64,000 bases of DNA from Pocillopora damicornis (lineage: Eukaryota). Under the pieces are notes generated by a model, which did no database searches, was not told where the DNA came from, and saw only the letters and a program-made list of their open reading frames with translations. The DNA lies in NCBI RefSeq assembly GCF_003704095.1, contig NW_020846537.1, positions 62,001-126,000 of the forward strand, written 5' to 3'. Every line of letters begins with the position of its first letter. The first letter of the stretch is position 1. Positions 1,632 through 48,353 of this stretch are shown piece by piece. A program made the position numbers and the translations under genes.

Positions 1632-4600
1632 ATGGATGATTCAGAAGTCAGAAATGAAGGTTTTTATGTTCATAAATTCATAGAATAGTATCAGTTTTAC
1701 TCATAATTATCCCTTCCAAGTCGTTAATTATGTTTATGAAATATGGCATTAGGAGTTATAATTATTGCGGCTCTTTTTAAGTCACATTTTTTTTTCAACT
1801 GATGTTTACTTGTTTTGTAGCCACCTCTAGTGATATAGCATTTGAACAGGCTCCTGTCACTGAAATCCACATACAGTCAATATGTGGTAAAGTGGGCACA
1901 GAATGGAGAGATCTGGGTACAGTCTTACGGCTTGAATCAGCGTTGATGAATATTATTGAGGCTGATCTCAGCGAATGCCGTGAAAGGGCACGGAAAGTGC
2001 TTCAAAAGTGGAAACAAAAAAACGGAAATAGAGCAACAGTTGGAATCCTTATAAATGCTCTTAACGAGATAAATAGGAAAGACGTCGTCGAAAAACTGCT
2101 CGGTATGTAATCTCCTCTTGTGAAGAAAATCTCTCAATACTAGGTTTATCTAGATCTATTTACTTTCCTAACGAAAAAACTGAACACCTATGTAGGAAAA
2201 GATCTTCGAACGAAAGTCTTGGTGGCCTTGTCAAGGAGGCTTCATTTTAGATGAAGATCGCGCTGCGAACAGTTTTTATTGTGCCTTCCTTCTAGGATGG
2301 CCTGAGGCGCTATGTAGTGCTGTGTCGTGTAAGTTCATAAACCTTCCCCACGCCCTTCAAGGTTTTCAAAATGGTTTCACGAGACACTCATAAAGTCTCT
2401 TGTGACTCGTCCTGGTTCTGCTCCGACACTAGCCATCATTGAACGAATCTGATCGGGTTTCTTCGGATTCATTTTTGGTTTTGTCGGGTTTAGTTCGATG
2501 TTTGCTAAGGGTCTCATCTCTGCATTTTGACATTGGTATCGACTTGAAGGTAAAAGATATGTCTTCAAACGTTCTCACGTGTGCATTTTAATCTGAACAC
2601 TTGAAAACATATCCTTTGAAGAAGAATGTAAATTGTAAGGAGAAAAAATTGAAAAGAAACCACAACAAAAGGACAACAATAAGTTGACGCGGCCAGGGCT
2701 CAAAGCTTACGCTCAAACTTTCGGACTCGAAAGGAGTAAGTACATCCATCGTGCTAGGGAAGAATGGCGTGCGAATGTTAGCGAAGTTTTGTATATCAAT
2801 ACATTTGACGCACATTAAATATATATACCTATTCGATTAATTTACCTGCCCTCGGCCTGTAAATTTACAGTGTACAAACTCTATTCTATCCAAATCCTCC
2901 TTTTGTCAAAATTTTGGCATTGACAAGAGCTTTTCATTAACACCTTTACATTTTGTACCACGTTGCTCTTTTTACTGCAATACTCTACAACTGTACAACG
3001 GTAGGCACATGCAGTGCACCAAGAAAGTGGTATCTAATTAAACGTAGCCTTAAGTTAAAGAAAACCAAAGTTAAAGCAAATGGAATATTTGCTTGCAGAA
3101 GGTAATAGGTTGTGAGGTCCATCGACGTGTCTGCGCACAGTCTCTCAGGTTGTAGCATTGTCGTGGAAGCTTAAAGCCCTTAAACTCGAGTTAGATCTCC
3201 TCAAATAATTGAAGAAATTGAACTAGTCCATCACTGCAATTGCATATGCCAACATTTGAGTAATTGTTAGGGCAATGTTAACGGCTTGTAAAGCTAGCAA
3301 CCTGACTACCGTGTACATCTGCAAATCTTTTGCCTCTTTGCATCTAGGAACGGGAAATGTGAAGAAAAGGTTAAGCTGCGCTCGGGCACTAAGTGGGAAT
3401 TTACAGAGAAAACTGGAAAATTAATATTTCGGGAAGGTTCTTTGTGTAAATATCCAAGGATAGAGACAAATTTATCGCGGCTCGAAATTTTTGCGAAGTT
3501 AAAGTACTACAGCAGGGGCTTAGAGCCTGAATGTAGCGAAAACAATAGGACAATAAAATGCCAGTGCAACCAGAAATCGTATTTTAACCCAGTATTAAGT
3601 TACCTTCCTGAAAACTTTTTACTTTATTATTTAAGAAAGAGCTTACTGTAACCTTGTTACCTTCGGTTAACATTTGCAAATTTCCTTCCACTATCTAACT
3701 AGATACAGAAAAAGTGGAGGCCGGATTGAGCTCCGTTCGAATTGCAAGTGGAAATTTACGAAAGGACGTTAAACTTTTAAAGGAAGAAGTACAAAACGTG
3801 CAACGGATTCATGAGGAAACACGGAAAGAACTCAAAGAATTAAAAGAAATCGTGTACAAAATACAAACAGCAACGGGAGATGAAGAGCGGCAGCACATGG
3901 AAACTAGGGTGCAACGCAGAGAGACAACAATTGAACTGCTTGACGAGCAGGATCCAATGCAAAGATCGACTCGATTGGAAGAAATTTGCGGCAGGATTGA
4001 CCAGGATCTGCGTGTTGTACAGGACAGCATCAAAATAGTCTCTGAAAACCAAAACGCGGTGGTTGGAATGTCATTCGAAGCCGGCAGGAATGCATCAGAT
4101 GAACCAAATGAGAGCCAACAGGGGGAAACCACATCGGCAGATCCAATCCAGAGAGACACAATACGGAGGGATTGGCAGAACCAAAGATACAATGAACCTA
4201 TTATACGACCTTTGCTTGACGGTAGGCTTATTCTACACAAATTATTATCAACCAAATTTGTAATGTTCTGTCCGAGAGACGTCGATGGAGTGAGATAAAC
4301 GAAAACGAGTTAATTCGAATTAAAAACTTTCGTTTTAATTTCAAAACATATCTCTCAACATTCCTATGCGCATGTTCAGTGTGCACGAAATACCGAAATG
4401 CAGCATTCTCTGAACACCCATCTTAAGATTTCAACTGAAATTGGACGATAAATGAATCACTTAGTGATACTGTAGTTCGCTGATCCTTTTTTAGGTTCAT
4501 TTAAAATTTTTTAGCACGAAGTTCAATAGATTATATGTCAATTATTTATGCGATCGTTGATTGGGTTTAAAACCTCGTCATTTTCGTCTTCATCTTTGGG

Positions 4601-6101
4601 TATAAAATAAGTTACCTTCGTTTTTTCTCTAAAGTGTTCGATAGAGATAACTGTGAACGTTATTTTCTTACAGATGTTGATCGAATACCGGCCTAATTTT
4701 CCTTGTTTCGAAAACATAACTGAATTTATCACCGTTAGAAGTGATGATTTCTATGTCGTCATAGTGACTGAGCCTACTGGCATCGCGGTTTTACTCACGA
4801 AAGTTTTACATTTTAATTTTTCAATTAATACCGAGGTCAAACTCAACTTTTGTTAGGAGAATGTTTAAGTTATGCAATCTCTGCAACACGTTTGCTAAAC
4901 GATTTGCAGGATTTCCAGGATATGAAAAGGAACTCAACGAAGTGGAAGGAGAAAGAGATTCACTGAAAACCAAATCTGGTAAATCAGACCAAACGAACCA
5001 AAGACAACTGGAGAAGAAAAGAAAGTTAAAAACAAATAATAAACAAGTTAAAGAGGAAAGAAACGATACCATTGAACCAAACAAAACAATGGTGGAGCAG
5101 ATTCAAAAGCTTGAAGCCGAGAAAAAGGAGCTCGAAATGACGTTAAATGGTCAAACCGATCTGAAGACTGAAAATAAAGAGCTGTCGACTCAAATAGAAA
5201 GGCTGACAAAAAAAGCAAACAACTCTGAGTTTGAGTGCAAGCGGCTACAAGAGGAGCTCAAGACGTACATAAATTACCAAAGTCGTAAGTACACGAAAGA
5301 ACTTTTTGAAAGATAGTATTGACTTTCCATCTTTGGCCAATCTGTTTTAGTATAAAGTGGTACAGCCTTGCGCTCTATTTACGTATCTGTCATATTAGCT
5401 TAGGTTTTTCTTTAACCCCTTCTTTCCCGTTAAGCACATTTTTCGCTGATGTTGAATTATATACATATGGGGAGGGGAGGCAAGATATATATTTTTTTTC
5501 TTTTAATGTTATCTATCTTACTTTCGTTTCCACTTAGGCGTTTTCTTACCAGCTGGAAAGGAATTTGCCGGCATATGCACTGGTGTCATCTGCTTCCTAA
5601 AACAAAGATTGAGAGATGCACCCTGCGCTGAACTGATTGCATCCAGATCCTCCGATGGCCCTGGAGATGGGGCTGACGTATTAAACCATAAGATGGGCAC
5701 CGTCAGTGGGACAGAAGGAAAGAAAAATTCGTGGTGGTCTATTGATCTGGGCTCAAGCCATCGGCTTGTGATCACACACTACGCTTTAAGGCACGGCAAA
5801 AGAGAAAAAGAGTCACTGCTAACCCAGTGGCAGCTGAAGGGATCAAATGATGGGAAGCACTGGGAAAACATTGAAACTATTCACGACAAGAAAGAACCAC
5901 AGTTCAAAGACCCTACTCCATTTTGTACAGGCAAATGGTCTGTCAAAGGGGAAATAGGGCCTTTTCGTTTTTTTCGAATTTTCCAGACAGGTGTTAATTC
6001 CTCTGGCAAATATGGAATATACCTATCTGGAATTGAGTTCTACGGAGTACTTCTGAACATGTGTGAGCTAGGAGCTATGGAGGCTTTATCCTATAAAGTT
6101 T
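1632..6101 (+). CDS. Gene A: Death domain - coiled coil - HECTD1-type SUN-like/galactose-binding domain protein (about 590 aa; stop codon lies in the N gap)
   Basis: Exons 1632-1659 (MDDSEVRNE), 1821-2102 (DD: W-RDLG..L.L...ERA.KVL.KW...NG..ATV..L..AL..I.R.DVVEKL), 3703-4221 (coiled coil), 4919-5284 (coiled coil; alternative in-frame acceptor 4910), 5538 to gap at 6102 (SWWSIDLG..HYALRHG..WQLKGSNDGKHW..FRFFRIFQTG.NSSG.YGIYLSGIEFYG). All GT-AG, all phase 1, open frame; same layout as paralogs B, C and D. Confidence 0.85.
3348..3487 (+). pseudogene. Relic (pseudo)exon: truncated, gene-B-type copy of coiled-coil exon 3 inside intron 2 of gene A
   Basis: Acceptor ctctttgcatctag (AG ends 3347), preceded by about 250 bp alignable to B intron 2 (12680-12975). 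Phase-1 translation GTGNVKKRLSCARALSGNLQRKLEN* resembles D TEKVEAGLHCARVQSSKLRREVD. The next part (gggaaggttctt...atccaa) matches B gggaaggatcta...atccaa. Stop at 3422-3424. Confidence 0.75.
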
Positions 6102-47300: not shown

Positions 47301-48353
47301 TGGCGAAATTGAAGGTTGAACTTGGTGAGAAAGAAAAACAAAAGGAAGAAGACTTTGCACGACTTCGTAAGGACTTCTTGGATCGTTGTCATTGTGAAGC
47401 GTTGAGGGAAGAAATCGCAAGACTAAGGAGCATGCCAGGACGTAAGTATGGTAACTGCATTTTATTAGTGTGCATTGTGATTGGTCTAGAAACTCACGCC
47501 ACCTCATCGACCGATCAAATTAAACAAAATCCAATCGCAGCTTGGTTACTCGCGTTTTCCCGCGCTTAAAGCCCTTGGAAGAGCTTGGTCACTCGCGTTT
47601 TCCCGCGTTAAAAGCCGTAGGAAGAGCAATCCTCAGAGCGGCAAAATATATCGCTCTAGAACAAGAATAATCTGACTGATTACCGATCGATTGATGTACC
47701 AATAAACTAATCCCGATGAATTAGAATCTCATCTGTCTTGTAGAGTTTTACGAGAAGAATATTCACATTCATGATATTTTCTGTCCTTTTTTAACCTAGG
47801 TGTTTTGAACTACAGGAAGGATTTTGATAGACATGGAGTCATCTATGCATTAGGAACAAATTTTGGTACCTCATCATGGGTGAATCCTAGTAGCTCAAAC
47901 GCTTTTCCGACGAGAATAATCGCCACACGATCTTCTGACGAACAAGGCTCGGCAAGTGATCTGCTAGATATTCGGAGAGGCGGATCATTAAGCGGCACCA
48001 AAGACGAGGAAAAATCGTGGTGGTGTGTTGACTTGAGCGAGAAATATGCTCTTTATCTCACACATTACACTCTCAGACATGGGCGAGACAACGGTATGTC
48101 AATCATTCGTAATTGGCGGCTTGAAGGATCGTTGGACGGACGTACTTGGAAACTGTTAAAGAAACACGAGAATGATCGCGGGCTTAAGGAGCCTTACCCA
48201 TATTACACCGCAACCTGGTGTGTCGATGGGGAGTTCGGAGCTTTTCGGTATTTCAGGATTTTTCAGACGAGCAAGAACTCTTCAGGGAGACATAGCATTT
48301 ATTTATCTGGTATTGAGCTGTATGGAGTCCTTATTGAACGACTCGACAGTTAA
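44358..48353 (+). CDS. Gene F: CARD - long coiled coil - HECTD1-type SUN-like/galactose-binding domain protein (737 aa predicted)
   Basis: Exons 44358-44622 (CARD: LLEILPRRGPAAFDEFVTALQE, caspase-2/RAIDD-like), 45396-46139, 46791-47441, 47800-48353; total 2214 nt, open frame, all phase-1 GT-AG introns. Confidence 0.9.
46276..46450. repeat. 27-bp CpG-rich minisatellite, about 6.5 copies, in intron 2 of gene F
   Basis: Unit gttcgtgctcgtcac(g/a)(g/a)gtcgctcgt(c/a), read directly from the sequence. Confidence 0.95.

What the first reader, a model, noticed from the sequence alone, without database searches (positions are those of the whole stretch)
1632..48353. Six-gene cluster encoding an apparently unnamed death-fold - coiled coil - HECTD1-type SUN-like/discoidin protein family (candidate intracellular sensor system)
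Seen: six open multi-exon paralogs with the same three-part layout and no evident signal peptide or transmembrane segment. Established: DD and CARD are homotypic signalling domains. The C-terminal motif series (DFD..GVIY..GTN..WVNP..Y.LRH..LRNW....S.DG..W..L..H..D..L.EP..TATW..R..Q..KN.SG...LSG.ELYG) is that of the galactose-binding-like Sad1/UNC domain of HECTD1. Inference: the layout parallels pyrin/TRIM or CARD9-type logic (effector death fold, oligomerising stalk, ligand-binding beta-sandwich) but with a different sensor domain. That suggests a lineage-expanded cytosolic innate-immune or cell-death receptor family, possibly glycan sensing. I know no named family with this architecture; pipelines would probably label these as HECTD1-like fragments.
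Basis: partly seen in the sequence, partly recalled or inferred. Interest (0 to 1): 0.92.

Follow-up and report, generated by a model that had tools for sequence, protein, structure and literature searches.

The report
Coral CARD/Death coiled-coil lectin-fold genes
A stony-coral genome carries a tandem cluster of real, expressed genes that join a cell-death signalling head (CARD or Death domain) through a long helical stalk to a sugar-binding-type beta-sandwich otherwise seen in the ubiquitin ligase HECTD1; nobody has named or studied this combination, and databases give it misleading names.

Summary
The window (Pocillopora damicornis, contig of 302,957 bp) carries six paralogs. Four have a Death head and two a CARD head. 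Each head is followed by 2-3 helical, charged exons and one C-terminal exon encoding a galactose-binding-like domain. I mapped every exon; all introns are phase 1 with GT..AG ends. RNA contigs from four runs (three studies) join all four exons of gene 6. A 514-aa transcript-derived database protein matches gene 5 exon for exon. Gaps hide the start and one donor of gene 4 and the last codons of gene 1. The C-terminal domain models at pLDDT 94.7 and matches CBM32 modules and F-lectins at Z 14-16. It is homologous to the domain just upstream of MIB_HERC2 in the coral's own HECTD1-like gene, but not to true SUN domains. The same domain follows BTB-BACK and B-box modules elsewhere. CARD-headed relatives occur in Acropora, Montipora, Stylophora, Oculina and Desmophyllum under names such as "HECTD1-like", "golgin-like" and "myosin-9-like". 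No paper describing the family was found. Death heads look derived, nested among CARD-headed genes. A role as a cytosolic death-fold signalling scaffold is plausible but inferred. Glycan sensing is untested. The C-terminal domain is the most conserved part. The scan noted parts of this stretch before (s1-763558, s1-763592).

The parts
1632..1659 (+). Gene 1, exon 1: start codon mini-exon (MDDSEVRNE), phase-1 donor
   Evidence: ATG, frame and AAG|GT donor conserved in genes 1-3
1821..2102 (+). Gene 1, exon 2: Death domain
   Evidence: Pfam Death E 2e-14; acceptor TTTTGTAG| and donor G|GTATGT conserved in genes 1-4
3703..4221 (+). Gene 1, exon 3: stalk part 1
   Evidence: Open frame with phase-1 splice sites; 36% charged residues
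4910..5284 (+). Gene 1, exon 4: stalk part 2
   Evidence: Open frame, acceptor TTTGCAG| and donor C|GTAAGT
5538..6101 (+). Gene 1, exon 5: galactose-binding-like domain; runs into the gap at 6102, so the tail and stop are unseen
   Evidence: Pfam F5_F8_type_C_2 E 7e-8; 92% identical to gene 3
11918..11945 (+). Gene 2, exon 1: start mini-exon
12142..12426 (+). Gene 2, exon 2: Death domain
   Evidence: Pfam Death E 7e-16; best solved relatives are the THOC1, RIPK1 and FADD death domains
12976..13278 (+). Gene 2, exon 3: stalk part 1 (shorter than in the paralogs)
15372..15845 (+). Gene 2, exon 4: stalk part 2
16006..16523 (+). Gene 2, exon 5: galactose-binding-like domain plus stop; the gene sums to 535 aa
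   Evidence: Pfam E 7e-6; acceptor read; exon sum is a multiple of 3
23091..23115 (+). Gene 3, exon 1: start mini-exon
23320..23601 (+). Gene 3, exon 2: Death domain
   Evidence: Pfam Death E 4e-12
24161..24670 (+). Gene 3, exon 3: stalk part 1
25404..25769 (+). Gene 3, exon 4: stalk part 2
26020..26609 (+). Gene 3, exon 5: galactose-binding-like domain plus stop; the gene sums to 590 aa
   Evidence: Pfam F5_F8_type_C_2 E 1.6e-8
32185..32466 (-). Gene 4, Death-domain exon; the start mini-exon should lie inside the gap 32508-32797
   Evidence: Pfam Death E 5e-15
31150..31707 (-). Gene 4, stalk part 1
30211..30693 (-). Gene 4, stalk part 2; its 3' end and donor are hidden by the gap 30111-30210
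29481..29998 (-). Gene 4, last exon: galactose-binding-like domain plus stop
   Evidence: Pfam F5_F8_type_C E 5e-8
36760..37024 (+). Gene 5, exon 1: CARD; annotated on its own as pdam_00013530
   Evidence: Pfam CARD E 4e-9; P0293 maps here
38757..38936 (+). Gene 5, exon 2: stalk
   Evidence: Transcript-derived P0244 residues 79-148 map here; splice sites read
39148..39345 (+). Gene 5, exon 3: stalk
39986..40333 (+). Gene 5, exon 4: stalk
40971..41524 (+). Gene 5, exon 5: galactose-binding-like domain plus stop; the gene sums to 514 aa, the length of P0244
   Evidence: Pfam hits at E 1.1e-4; 98.9% identical to P0244
44358..44622 (+). Gene 6, exon 1: CARD; the 5' UTR reaches back to at least 44083
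   Evidence: Pfam CARD E 6e-15; RNA joint 44621/2 to 45395/6, GT..AG, in 4 runs
45396..46139 (+). Gene 6, exon 2: stalk part 1
   Evidence: RNA joints on both sides in 4 runs
46791..47441 (+). Gene 6, exon 3: stalk part 2
   Evidence: RNA joints on both sides in 4 runs
47800..48353 (+). Gene 6, exon 4: galactose-binding-like domain plus stop; the gene sums to 737 aa
   Evidence: RNA joint 47441 to 47800; AF2 model pLDDT 94.7; fold matches at Z 14-16

Best explanation
This is a stony-coral family of cytosolic three-part proteins, expanded by tandem duplication in Pocillopora damicornis (six genes in the window, more upstream).

Shown: each gene encodes a death-fold head (CARD in genes 5-6, Death in genes 1-4), then about 240-460 residues of charged helix, then one HECTD1/BTBD9-type galactose-binding-like beta-sandwich. 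Genes 5 and 6 are spliced and expressed as single transcripts. CARD-headed relatives exist in both major scleractinian clades. All domains evolve under purifying selection, strongest on the C-terminal domain.

Inferred: the stalk makes the protein oligomeric. The C-terminal sandwich recognises a conserved ligand, either a protein/peptide (as its position in E3 ligases suggests) or a glycan (as its fold suggests). Ligand binding or clustering lets the heads nucleate homotypic CARD or Death assemblies that recruit caspases or adaptors. The logic is that of CARD9-type or TRIM/pyrin-type scaffolds. The Death head replaced an ancestral CARD in one subclade by exon swap, which is easy because every intron is phase 1. 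That swap would rewire the same chassis to another downstream partner.
For: - Domains: Pfam Death and CARD on the heads and F5/8-C-like on the tails. The nearest solved CARD is RAIDD, then CARD11 and Apaf-1; the nearest solved Death domains are THOC1, RIPK1 and FADD.
- One transcript: RNA contigs from 4 runs in 3 studies join all four gene 6 exons with GT..AG ends, and one 3,627-nt contig spans them all. P0244 is a 514-aa protein from run assemblies that maps exon by exon on gene 5.
- Stalk: AF2 on P0244 gives a CARD bundle at pLDDT above 90, then helices 79-209 and 243-326.
- Tail fold: pLDDT 94.7. Foldseek E 1e-7 and VIA Z 14-16 to CBM32, F-lectins and the galactose oxidase N-domain; APC10, muskelin and the HERC2 DOC domain also match.
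- HECTD1 link: four collinear exons at G000:C325, next to MIB_HERC2 and HECT, match the family profile at E 1e-12 to 9e-5.
- The same domain follows BTB-BACK and B-box modules in other proteins.
- Cytosolic: no hydrophobic segment, charged N-termini.
- Constraint: dN/dS is 0.17-0.31 on the tail in most pairs (0.61 for gene 1 vs 2), 0.34-0.96 on the heads and 0.3-0.8 on the stalk.
- Distribution: Acropora, Montipora, Stylophora, Oculina, Desmophyllum.
- Tree: the coral family is one clade (100/99), and Death-headed genes nest within CARD-headed ones.
Against: - No functional datum of any kind exists. No partner, ligand or expression response was tested.
- The homodimer prediction for the stalk gave no answer.
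- The C-terminal domain is the slowest-evolving part, which is unlike many pathogen-facing sensor domains.
- No transcript evidence was obtained for the four Death-headed genes. No Death-headed relative was found outside this genome, though those searches were limited.
- Genes 1 and 4 cross assembly gaps.
- Several upstream copies have no recognisable head.
- The CARD is not closest to CARD9/11, so the CARD-CC analogy is one of layout only.
Confidence: 0.55

Rival explanations
1. One reading: cytosolic glycan receptors. The C-terminal sandwich is a working lectin that detects microbial, symbiont or damage-exposed sugars (as galectins do on ruptured vacuoles) and triggers death-fold signalling.
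For: The closest solved structures are all carbohydrate-binding modules: CBM32 with galactose, fucolectins, and the sialidase and galactose-oxidase lectin domains, at Z 14-16. Profile hits to solved sequences are GH92 CBM32, FBP32 and neuropilin b-domains.
Against: Sequence identity to those lectins is only 13-20%. Binding-site residues could not be compared with these tools. Intracellular members of the fold (APC10, muskelin, HERC2 DOC) bind proteins and also match. In BTB-BACK, B-box and HECT proteins the domain occupies the substrate-recognition position.
Confidence: 0.2
2. The CARD-headed genes are divergent members of the CARD-CC family (CARD9/10/11/14 and cnidarian CARD-CC). They signal through Bcl10 and a MALT1-like paracaspase, and the C-terminal domain acts as the autoinhibitory or regulatory tail.
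For: The layout is the same, with a CARD running directly into a long helix. CARD11 is among the best solved CARD matches, at E 1.4e-3. Cnidarians have CARD-CC, Bcl10 and type 1 paracaspases (PMC5978004).
Against: The best solved CARD match is RAIDD (E 3e-6), and CARD9 is not listed at E 0.01 or better. The published cnidarian CARD-CC is described with an undefined C-terminal region, not a discoidin-like domain. Four genes carry Death heads instead of CARD.
Confidence: 0.1
3. The proteins are structural or trafficking coiled-coil proteins (golgin-, girdin- or CEP83-like, as some automatic names say), and the head and tail are simple docking modules without a signalling role.
For: Long charged helical stalks; automatic names from RefSeq.
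Against: Those names come from low-complexity coiled-coil similarity only. The stalk is the least conserved part between species (77-89% against 93-99% for head and tail). Death-fold heads are signalling modules in all characterised cases (established knowledge).
Confidence: 0.07
4. The four Death-headed genes are young, decaying or silent duplicates, and only the CARD-headed genes are functional.
For: No transcript-derived or RefSeq protein with a Death head and this tail was recovered. Head dN/dS reaches 0.72-0.96 in some pairs. Upstream copies are fragmentary.
Against: Genes 2 and 3 have five intact exons, conserved start codons, conserved phase-1 GT..AG sites and whole-codon sums. The tail dN/dS of 0.25-0.31 shows constraint after duplication. 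Exon-level copies 88-95% identical occur in many coral metagenome assemblies.
Confidence: 0.15

Closest known systems
HECTD1 (E3 ubiquitin ligase), the 'SUN-like' galactose-binding-like domain upstream of MIB/HERC2
   Same: The C-terminal domain is homologous. The coral's own HECTD1-like gene matches the family profile over four collinear exons and shares the motifs DFDxNGxxYxLGTNG..W.NP, YTLRH, LRNW..S.DGK.W, T.SW and GKN.SG...LSG.E.YG.
   Different: The window genes have no ankyrin repeats, MIB_HERC2 or HECT domain. Own-genome HECT and MIB_HERC2 hits lie on other contigs. Here the domain is one exon at the C-terminus behind a death-fold head and a stalk. These genes are not HECTD1 orthologs or fragments.
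BTBD9-type BTB-BACK proteins and B-box (TRIM-like) proteins that carry the same domain
   Same: They carry the same domain subfamily at the C-terminus, after an oligomerising module. The B-box versions parallel the TRIM layout of effector, coiled coil and recognition domain.
   Different: Their N-terminal modules feed ubiquitin ligases, whereas here the module is a death-fold. In the tree they form a separate clade from the coral death-fold family (100/99).
CARD-CC family (CARD9, CARD10, CARD11, CARD14; cnidarian CARD-CC)
   Same: A CARD followed directly by a long coiled coil and a regulatory C-terminal region. The likely logic is the same: oligomeric scaffold plus CARD nucleation.
   Different: The C-terminal domain is different and orthology of the CARD is not shown (RAIDD is the best solved match). 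Four paralogs use Death instead. No PKC, Bcl10 or MALT1 link was tested.
Pyrin/TRIM and other tripartite innate sensors
   Same: The order is the same: effector domain, coiled-coil stalk, C-terminal beta-sandwich recognition domain.
   Different: There is no RING, B-box, PYD or B30.2/SPRY domain. The sandwich is of the discoidin/CBM32 type, not SPRY.
CBM32 / F-type lectin / discoidin (F5/8 type C) carbohydrate-binding modules
   Same: Same fold by prediction (Z 14-16, rmsd 1.7-3.3 A over 125-151 residues). Pfam F5_F8_type_C and F5_F8_type_C_2 hits lie near their cut-offs.
   Different: Those modules are extracellular or bacterial, and identity is only 13-20%. The coral domain has an extra N-terminal segment of about 40 residues. 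Sugar binding is not shown.
Sad1/UNC (SUN) domain
   Same: It belongs to the same broad galactose-binding-like superfamily. Pfam Sad1_UNC weakly hits the last domain exon of the coral HECTD1-like gene (E 0.006) and some multi-repeat relatives.
   Different: Pfam Sad1_UNC does not hit the window's exons. The genome's real SUN genes do not match the family profile.

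Membership tests
Death domain (Pfam PF00531, death-fold superfamily) | Sequence match to the six-helix Death profile above the curated cut-off | tested here: met
   Genes 1-4 score 46.5-58.5 bits against a cut-off of 22.6. phmmer finds the THOC1, RIPK1 and FADD death domains at E 1e-7 to 1e-5.
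CARD (Pfam PF00619) | Sequence match above the curated cut-off, and a six-helix bundle | tested here: met
   Genes 5 and 6 score 36.8 and 55.5 bits against a cut-off of 23.9. AF2 of P0244 residues 1-78 gives six helices at pLDDT above 90.
Galactose-binding-like / discoidin (F5/8 type C, CBM32) fold | Beta-sandwich jelly roll that superposes on solved members | tested here: met
   AF2 pLDDT 94.7, pTM 0.91. Foldseek gives 314 chains at E 0.001 or better, with CBM32 and F-lectins on top. VIA gives Z 14-16.
HECTD1/BTBD9-type subfamily of that fold | N-terminal DFD..G[IV].Y..GTN..W.NP segment plus the LRNW..GS.DG..W and NSSG...LSG.E.YG motifs | tested here: met
   Genes 5 and 6 have all the motifs. 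Genes 1-4 lack the N-terminal segment but keep the rest. The coral HECTD1-like gene aligns to the family profile.
HECTD1 orthologs or fragments (as the databases label them) | Ankyrin repeats, MIB_HERC2 and a C-terminal HECT domain in the same gene | tested here: not met
   Pfam found none of these in the scanned exons (all heads and tails and most stalk exons). All MIB_HERC2 and HECT matches in the genome lie on other contigs, and the real HECTD1-like gene is on C325.
Sad1/UNC (SUN) domain, Pfam PF07738 | Match to the Sad1_UNC profile | tested here: not met
   No hit at E 0.1 or better for any of the six exons. The genome's Sad1_UNC genes (C3135, C1453) do not match the family profile.
CARD-CC family (CARD9/10/11/14) | CARD immediately followed by a long coiled coil | tested here: met
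   In the AF2 model of P0244, helix 79-209 starts right after the CARD.
CARD-CC family (CARD9/10/11/14) | CARD orthologous to the CARD9/11 type and able to nucleate Bcl10 | tested here: inconclusive
   The best solved match is RAIDD (30.5 bits); CARD11 scores 22 bits and CARD9 is not listed. Bcl10 binding is not testable here.
TRIM / pyrin family | RING and/or B-box (or PYD) N-terminal module and a B30.2/SPRY tail | tested here: not met
   No such Pfam hits in the window genes. B-box versions of the tail exist only in other proteins.
Functional lectins (CBM32 / F-type) | Conserved sugar- and Ca-binding residues in the loop face | not testable with these tools
   The fold tools return ranges, not residue pairings or coordinates. 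Identity is 13-20%.

The most novel reading that the evidence does not exclude
A stony-coral-specific class of cytosolic receptor. A HECTD1/BTBD9-type lectin-fold domain detects a conserved danger, symbiont or pathogen ligand. Through a coiled-coil oligomer it seeds CARD or Death filaments that activate caspases or NF-kB, so it would be an inflammasome- or PIDDosome-like platform built from parts not combined in any studied animal. A recent CARD-to-Death exon swap would rewire its output in Pocillopora.
Probability: 0.25. Interest if true: 0.85.

Novelty: new variant of a known kind. Interest (0 to 1): 0.6.

Why it matters
Cell-death and immune signalling decide whether corals keep or expel their symbionts and survive heat and disease, yet most coral death-fold proteins are unstudied. 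This family is conserved across both major stony-coral clades, is expressed, and is tandemly expanded. Public annotation hides it in two ways. Misleading names (HECTD1-like, hecd-1-like, Ufd4-like, golgin-, girdin- and myosin-9-like) can mislead expression studies and GO enrichments. Truncated or fused gene models do the same: pdam_00013530 is only the CARD exon of gene 5, and a Stylophora model fuses the gene 6 ortholog to the neighbouring COMMD gene. The family also offers a handle on the ligand of the HECTD1/BTBD9-type domain, for which I know of no identified ligand (own knowledge, not searched here). Finally, it is a clean natural example of effector-head swapping by phase-compatible exons.

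Tried and rejected
1. Homodimer prediction for the stalk (P0244 residues 75-330, two copies) returned 'no answer' at score 0.18 against a mark of 0.32 (after two busy errors). It is evidence neither for nor against binding.

2. Search for Death-headed relatives elsewhere. Two alignment-based protein searches and local Death/CARD HMM scans of all 286 proteins fetched by then found none. In another coral assembly (ERZ25067556) the gene with a gene 1-4-like stalk and tail has a CARD head. A Tara scaffold (L018) showed tails and stalks but no recognisable head. The searches are word-limited and capped, so absence is not shown.

3. Stylophora contig of PFX12246.1 ('HECTD1', P0151). Only the stalk and tail were seen and a large gap hides the rest. 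An exact look-up of P0184 found no record.

4. 'SUN domain' reading. The own-genome Sad1_UNC search finds a SUCO-like and a SUN-like gene that do not match the family profile, so this reading was rejected.

5. Weak own-genome matches on C1500 and C1274 are short degenerate fragments, not HECTD1.

6. Literature. Five searches or readings found no description of the architecture. One search failed on a term format.

7. The ESM Atlas has no large cluster with the full architecture.

8. Full-length AF2 of P0244 modelled the tail poorly (pLDDT below 50) with a 23-row alignment. The domain-only model was used instead.

Searches were exon by exon, by reference. Full-length work used the database proteins P0244 and P0184. 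No gap was filled.

Full report
Origin. The window is G000:C3172:62001-126000, in a 234.35 Mb assembly of 4,393 contigs with 38% G+C. A RefSeq/GenBank protein named 'pdam_00013530 [Pocillopora damicornis]' lies on a contig of exactly the same length as C3172, 302,957 bp, and maps on gene 5's first exon. The organism is therefore the stony coral P. damicornis. RNA runs that hold the stretch are labelled coral or marine metatranscriptomes.

Observation. Stop-to-stop frames on both strands show six collinear sets of exons. Pfam gives Death for the heads of genes 1-4 (E 4e-12 to 7e-16) and CARD for genes 5-6 (4e-9 and 6e-15). All six last exons hit F5_F8_type_C or F5_F8_type_C_2 (1e-4 to 2e-8). 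The scanned middle exons (eight of the fifteen stalk exons) give only weak coiled-coil-type hits. The six tails align with 46 invariant columns, at 41-65% identity to gene 6's tail. The nearest solved CARD is RAIDD, followed by CARD11 and Apaf-1. The nearest solved Death domains are THOC1, RIPK1 and FADD.

Gene models. I read every boundary from the DNA.
- Genes 1-3 start with a conserved 25-28 nt coding mini-exon. The apparent ATG inside the Death-exon frame of genes 1-2 lies in the polypyrimidine tract of the acceptor.
- Every intron in all six genes is phase 1 with GT..AG ends.
- Gap-free genes sum to whole codons: gene 2 is 535 aa, gene 3 is 590, gene 5 is 514 and gene 6 is 737.

Gaps.
- Gap 6102-6201 removes the last ~8 codons and the stop of gene 1.
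- Gap 30111-30210 removes the end and donor of gene 4's second stalk exon.
- Gap 32508-32797 should hold gene 4's start exon.
- Gaps 17741-17840 and 35875-35884 are intergenic.
- I did not fill any gap.

Transcript evidence. Contigs of four RNA-seq runs from three studies, laid on 43400-48900, show three joints. These are 44621/2 to 45395/6, 46137/9 to 46789/91 and 47441 to 47800, all GT..AG. Single contigs of 3,627 and 2,310 nt span CARD, both stalk exons and the tail. The 514-aa protein P0244 was assembled from public runs and represents 103 member sequences. It maps on gene 5's five exons at 97% (CARD), 88-89% (stalk) and 99% (tail) identity, and it has exactly the predicted length. Their intact exons and conserved splice sites argue that they are, or recently were, functional. 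So does dN/dS: the tails score 0.25-0.31 in most pairs (0.61 for gene 1 vs 2) and the heads 0.55-0.96.

Cytosolic, helical stalk. No exon has a 19-residue Kyte-Doolittle mean above 1.44, and the N-termini are charged. AF2 on P0244 gives a six-helix CARD (pLDDT above 90) running into helix 79-209 (pLDDT 84-94), a disordered linker, and helix 243-326. A homodimer prediction gave no answer.

The C-terminal domain. With a 52-row alignment, gene 6's tail models at pLDDT 94.7 and pTM 0.91.
- Foldseek finds 314 solved chains at E 0.001 or better. The top matches are CBM32 modules, lectinolysin and eel or bass fucolectins, sialidase and galactose-oxidase lectin domains. Intracellular APC10, muskelin and the HERC2 DOC domain also match.
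- VIA-align gives Z 14-16. The third refutation test (not a galactose-binding-like fold) fails too.
- Pfam Sad1_UNC does not hit these exons, and the genome's real SUN genes do not match the family profile.
- On contig C325, four collinear + strand exons (about 290.2-292.6 kb) match the family profile at E 1e-12, 9e-5, 7e-9 and 5e-10. They are followed by MIB_HERC2 (292.8-294.0 kb) and HECT (306.0-306.8 kb), which is the HECTD1 layout.
The 'HECTD1-type' claim is correct; the 'SUN' label is not.

Wider family. An exhaustive HMMER search of 1.84 billion representatives found 5,868 proteins at E 0.001 or better. Among the hits I scanned, the domain follows BTB-BACK (BTBD9-like), B-box (TRIM-like) or CARD modules, or it occurs in multi-repeat proteins that also hit Sad1_UNC. 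In its non-death-fold contexts it sits where E3 ligases recognise substrates.

Distribution and names. CARD-stalk-tail proteins occur in Montipora capricornis and M. foliosa, in Acropora muricata, A. palmata, A. millepora, A. digitifera and A. cervicornis, and in Stylophora pistillata, Oculina patagonica and Desmophyllum pertusum. That covers both the complex and the robust corals. Their names include 'HECTD1-like', 'hecd-1-like', 'Ufd4-like', 'golgin subfamily A member 6-like', 'girdin-like', 'GRIP1-associated protein 1-like', 'myosin-9-like', 'MRCK beta-like', 'CEP83-like' and 'uncharacterized'. Stylophora P0184 is the gene 6 ortholog at 94/77/81/93% identity by exon. Its model runs on into the neighbouring COMMD gene, which shows conserved synteny and a fused annotation. 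No paper describing the architecture was found. The published cnidarian CARD-CC is described with an undefined C-terminal region (PMC5978004).

Cluster size and history. The own-genome search puts every strong tail match on C3172. Upstream of the window lie more Death, stalk and tail exons in gap-ridden DNA, and some copies have no recognisable head. A maximum-likelihood tree of 43 tails makes the coral death-fold family one clade (100/99) against the BTB and B-box versions. Clade B is all CARD-headed and includes genes 5 and 6. In clade A (100/98), CARD-headed genes from Oculina, a JGI sample and another coral assembly branch off in turn before the Death-headed genes 1-4 (99/92, 91/84, 92/83). 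The Death head is thus most simply a replacement of an ancestral CARD, and uniform phase-1 introns make that easy. Between genes 1 and 3, dS falls from 0.58 (head) to 0.16 (tail), so the pair is a mosaic. That fits note s1-763592.

Mechanism. The shown parts are the domains, the splicing, the fold, the homology and the selective constraint. The inferred parts are oligomerisation by the stalk, recognition of a conserved ligand by the tail, and induced-proximity nucleation of CARD or Death assemblies. I put 0.55 on this scaffold reading. For the ligand I put about 0.2 on a glycan. A protein ligand is at least as likely, because of the E3 contexts and the strong conservation of the tail.

Verdict. 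This is a new variant of a known kind (death-fold/coiled-coil scaffolds) with an unstudied recognition domain. It is interesting for coral immunity and cell death and for the unknown function of the HECTD1/BTBD9 domain. It is not startling, because lineage-specific death-fold architectures are already known in marine invertebrates (PMC8195603). Exons were never joined for a search or fold; full-length analyses used database proteins.

Noticed in passing
G000:C3172:5700-62000 (upstream of the window; loci L007-L013): The cluster continues upstream. There are Death exons at about 5.7, 7.1, 7.6, 29.6, 57.0 and 61.8 kb. Tail exons lie at about 16.3 (-), 20.9 (-), 22.8-23.5 (+) and 50.7 kb (+), with stalk exons between them. 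The DNA holds 33 assembly gaps, and some copies have no recognisable head. The Death exon at 61752-62000 (-) is cut by the window's start.
   Followed up: partly
window 52495-55803 (+): Residues 720-870 of the Stylophora model P0184 ('myosin-9-like isoform X2') map here, on the COMM-domain gene downstream of gene 6. That RefSeq model therefore fuses two neighbouring genes. It also shows that the gene order is conserved between Pocillopora and Stylophora.
   Followed up: partly
window 36760-37469 (+): The deposited P. damicornis annotation has gene 5 only as a 128-aa 'hypothetical protein pdam_00013530'. It consists of the CARD exon spliced to a spurious exon at 37350-37469.
   Followed up: yes
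all introns of genes 1-6, e.g. 2102/3703, 44622/45396, 47441/47800: Every intron is phase 1, so every internal exon is symmetric (1-1). This gene structure lets heads or stalk pieces be swapped or duplicated without breaking the frame.
   Followed up: partly
window 46791-46860 (gene 6), 15372-15440 (gene 2), 30640-30693 (gene 4, -): A CxxC motif (CSRC, CQIC, CLRC) sits at the start of the second stalk exon, in the non-helical linker between the two long helices. It is in the consensus of CARD-headed relatives of other corals (CSRCE) but is absent from gene 5 and from my exon models of genes 1 and 3. Its role is unknown; a metal or redox site is possible.
   Followed up: no
window 1821-6101 vs 23320-26606: Genes 1 and 3 are mosaics. 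Synonymous divergence is 0.58 in the Death exon, 0.22 and 0.12 in the stalk exons and 0.16 in the tail. This points to recombination or gene conversion between paralogs.
   Followed up: partly
L001 4661-5008 (+) and 8055-8297 (-); L002 3916-4074 (+) and 6300-6545 (-) (G000:C1500 and C1274): Degenerate fragments of the tail domain lie a few kb from an open frame that reads like another death-fold domain (…LAEKLGLTPAEIRFLDKR…), at two unlinked loci that resemble each other. The death-fold reading is by eye only and was not tested. These may be dispersed relics or a repeat-borne copy.
   Followed up: no
proteins P0113, P0171, P0197, P0199 (run and metagenome assemblies, organism unknown): B-box (and RING, filamin or FN3) proteins end in the same HECTD1/BTBD9-type domain. 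This is a TRIM-like layout with this domain in place of SPRY.
   Followed up: no
window 9379-9774 (-) and 19918-20531 (-); 409-1209, 10167-11150, 20723-21686: Long intergenic blocks, including similar minus-strand open frames, are shared at 72-79% identity upstream of genes 1, 2 and 3. The duplication unit was therefore the whole gene plus its flank.
   Followed up: no
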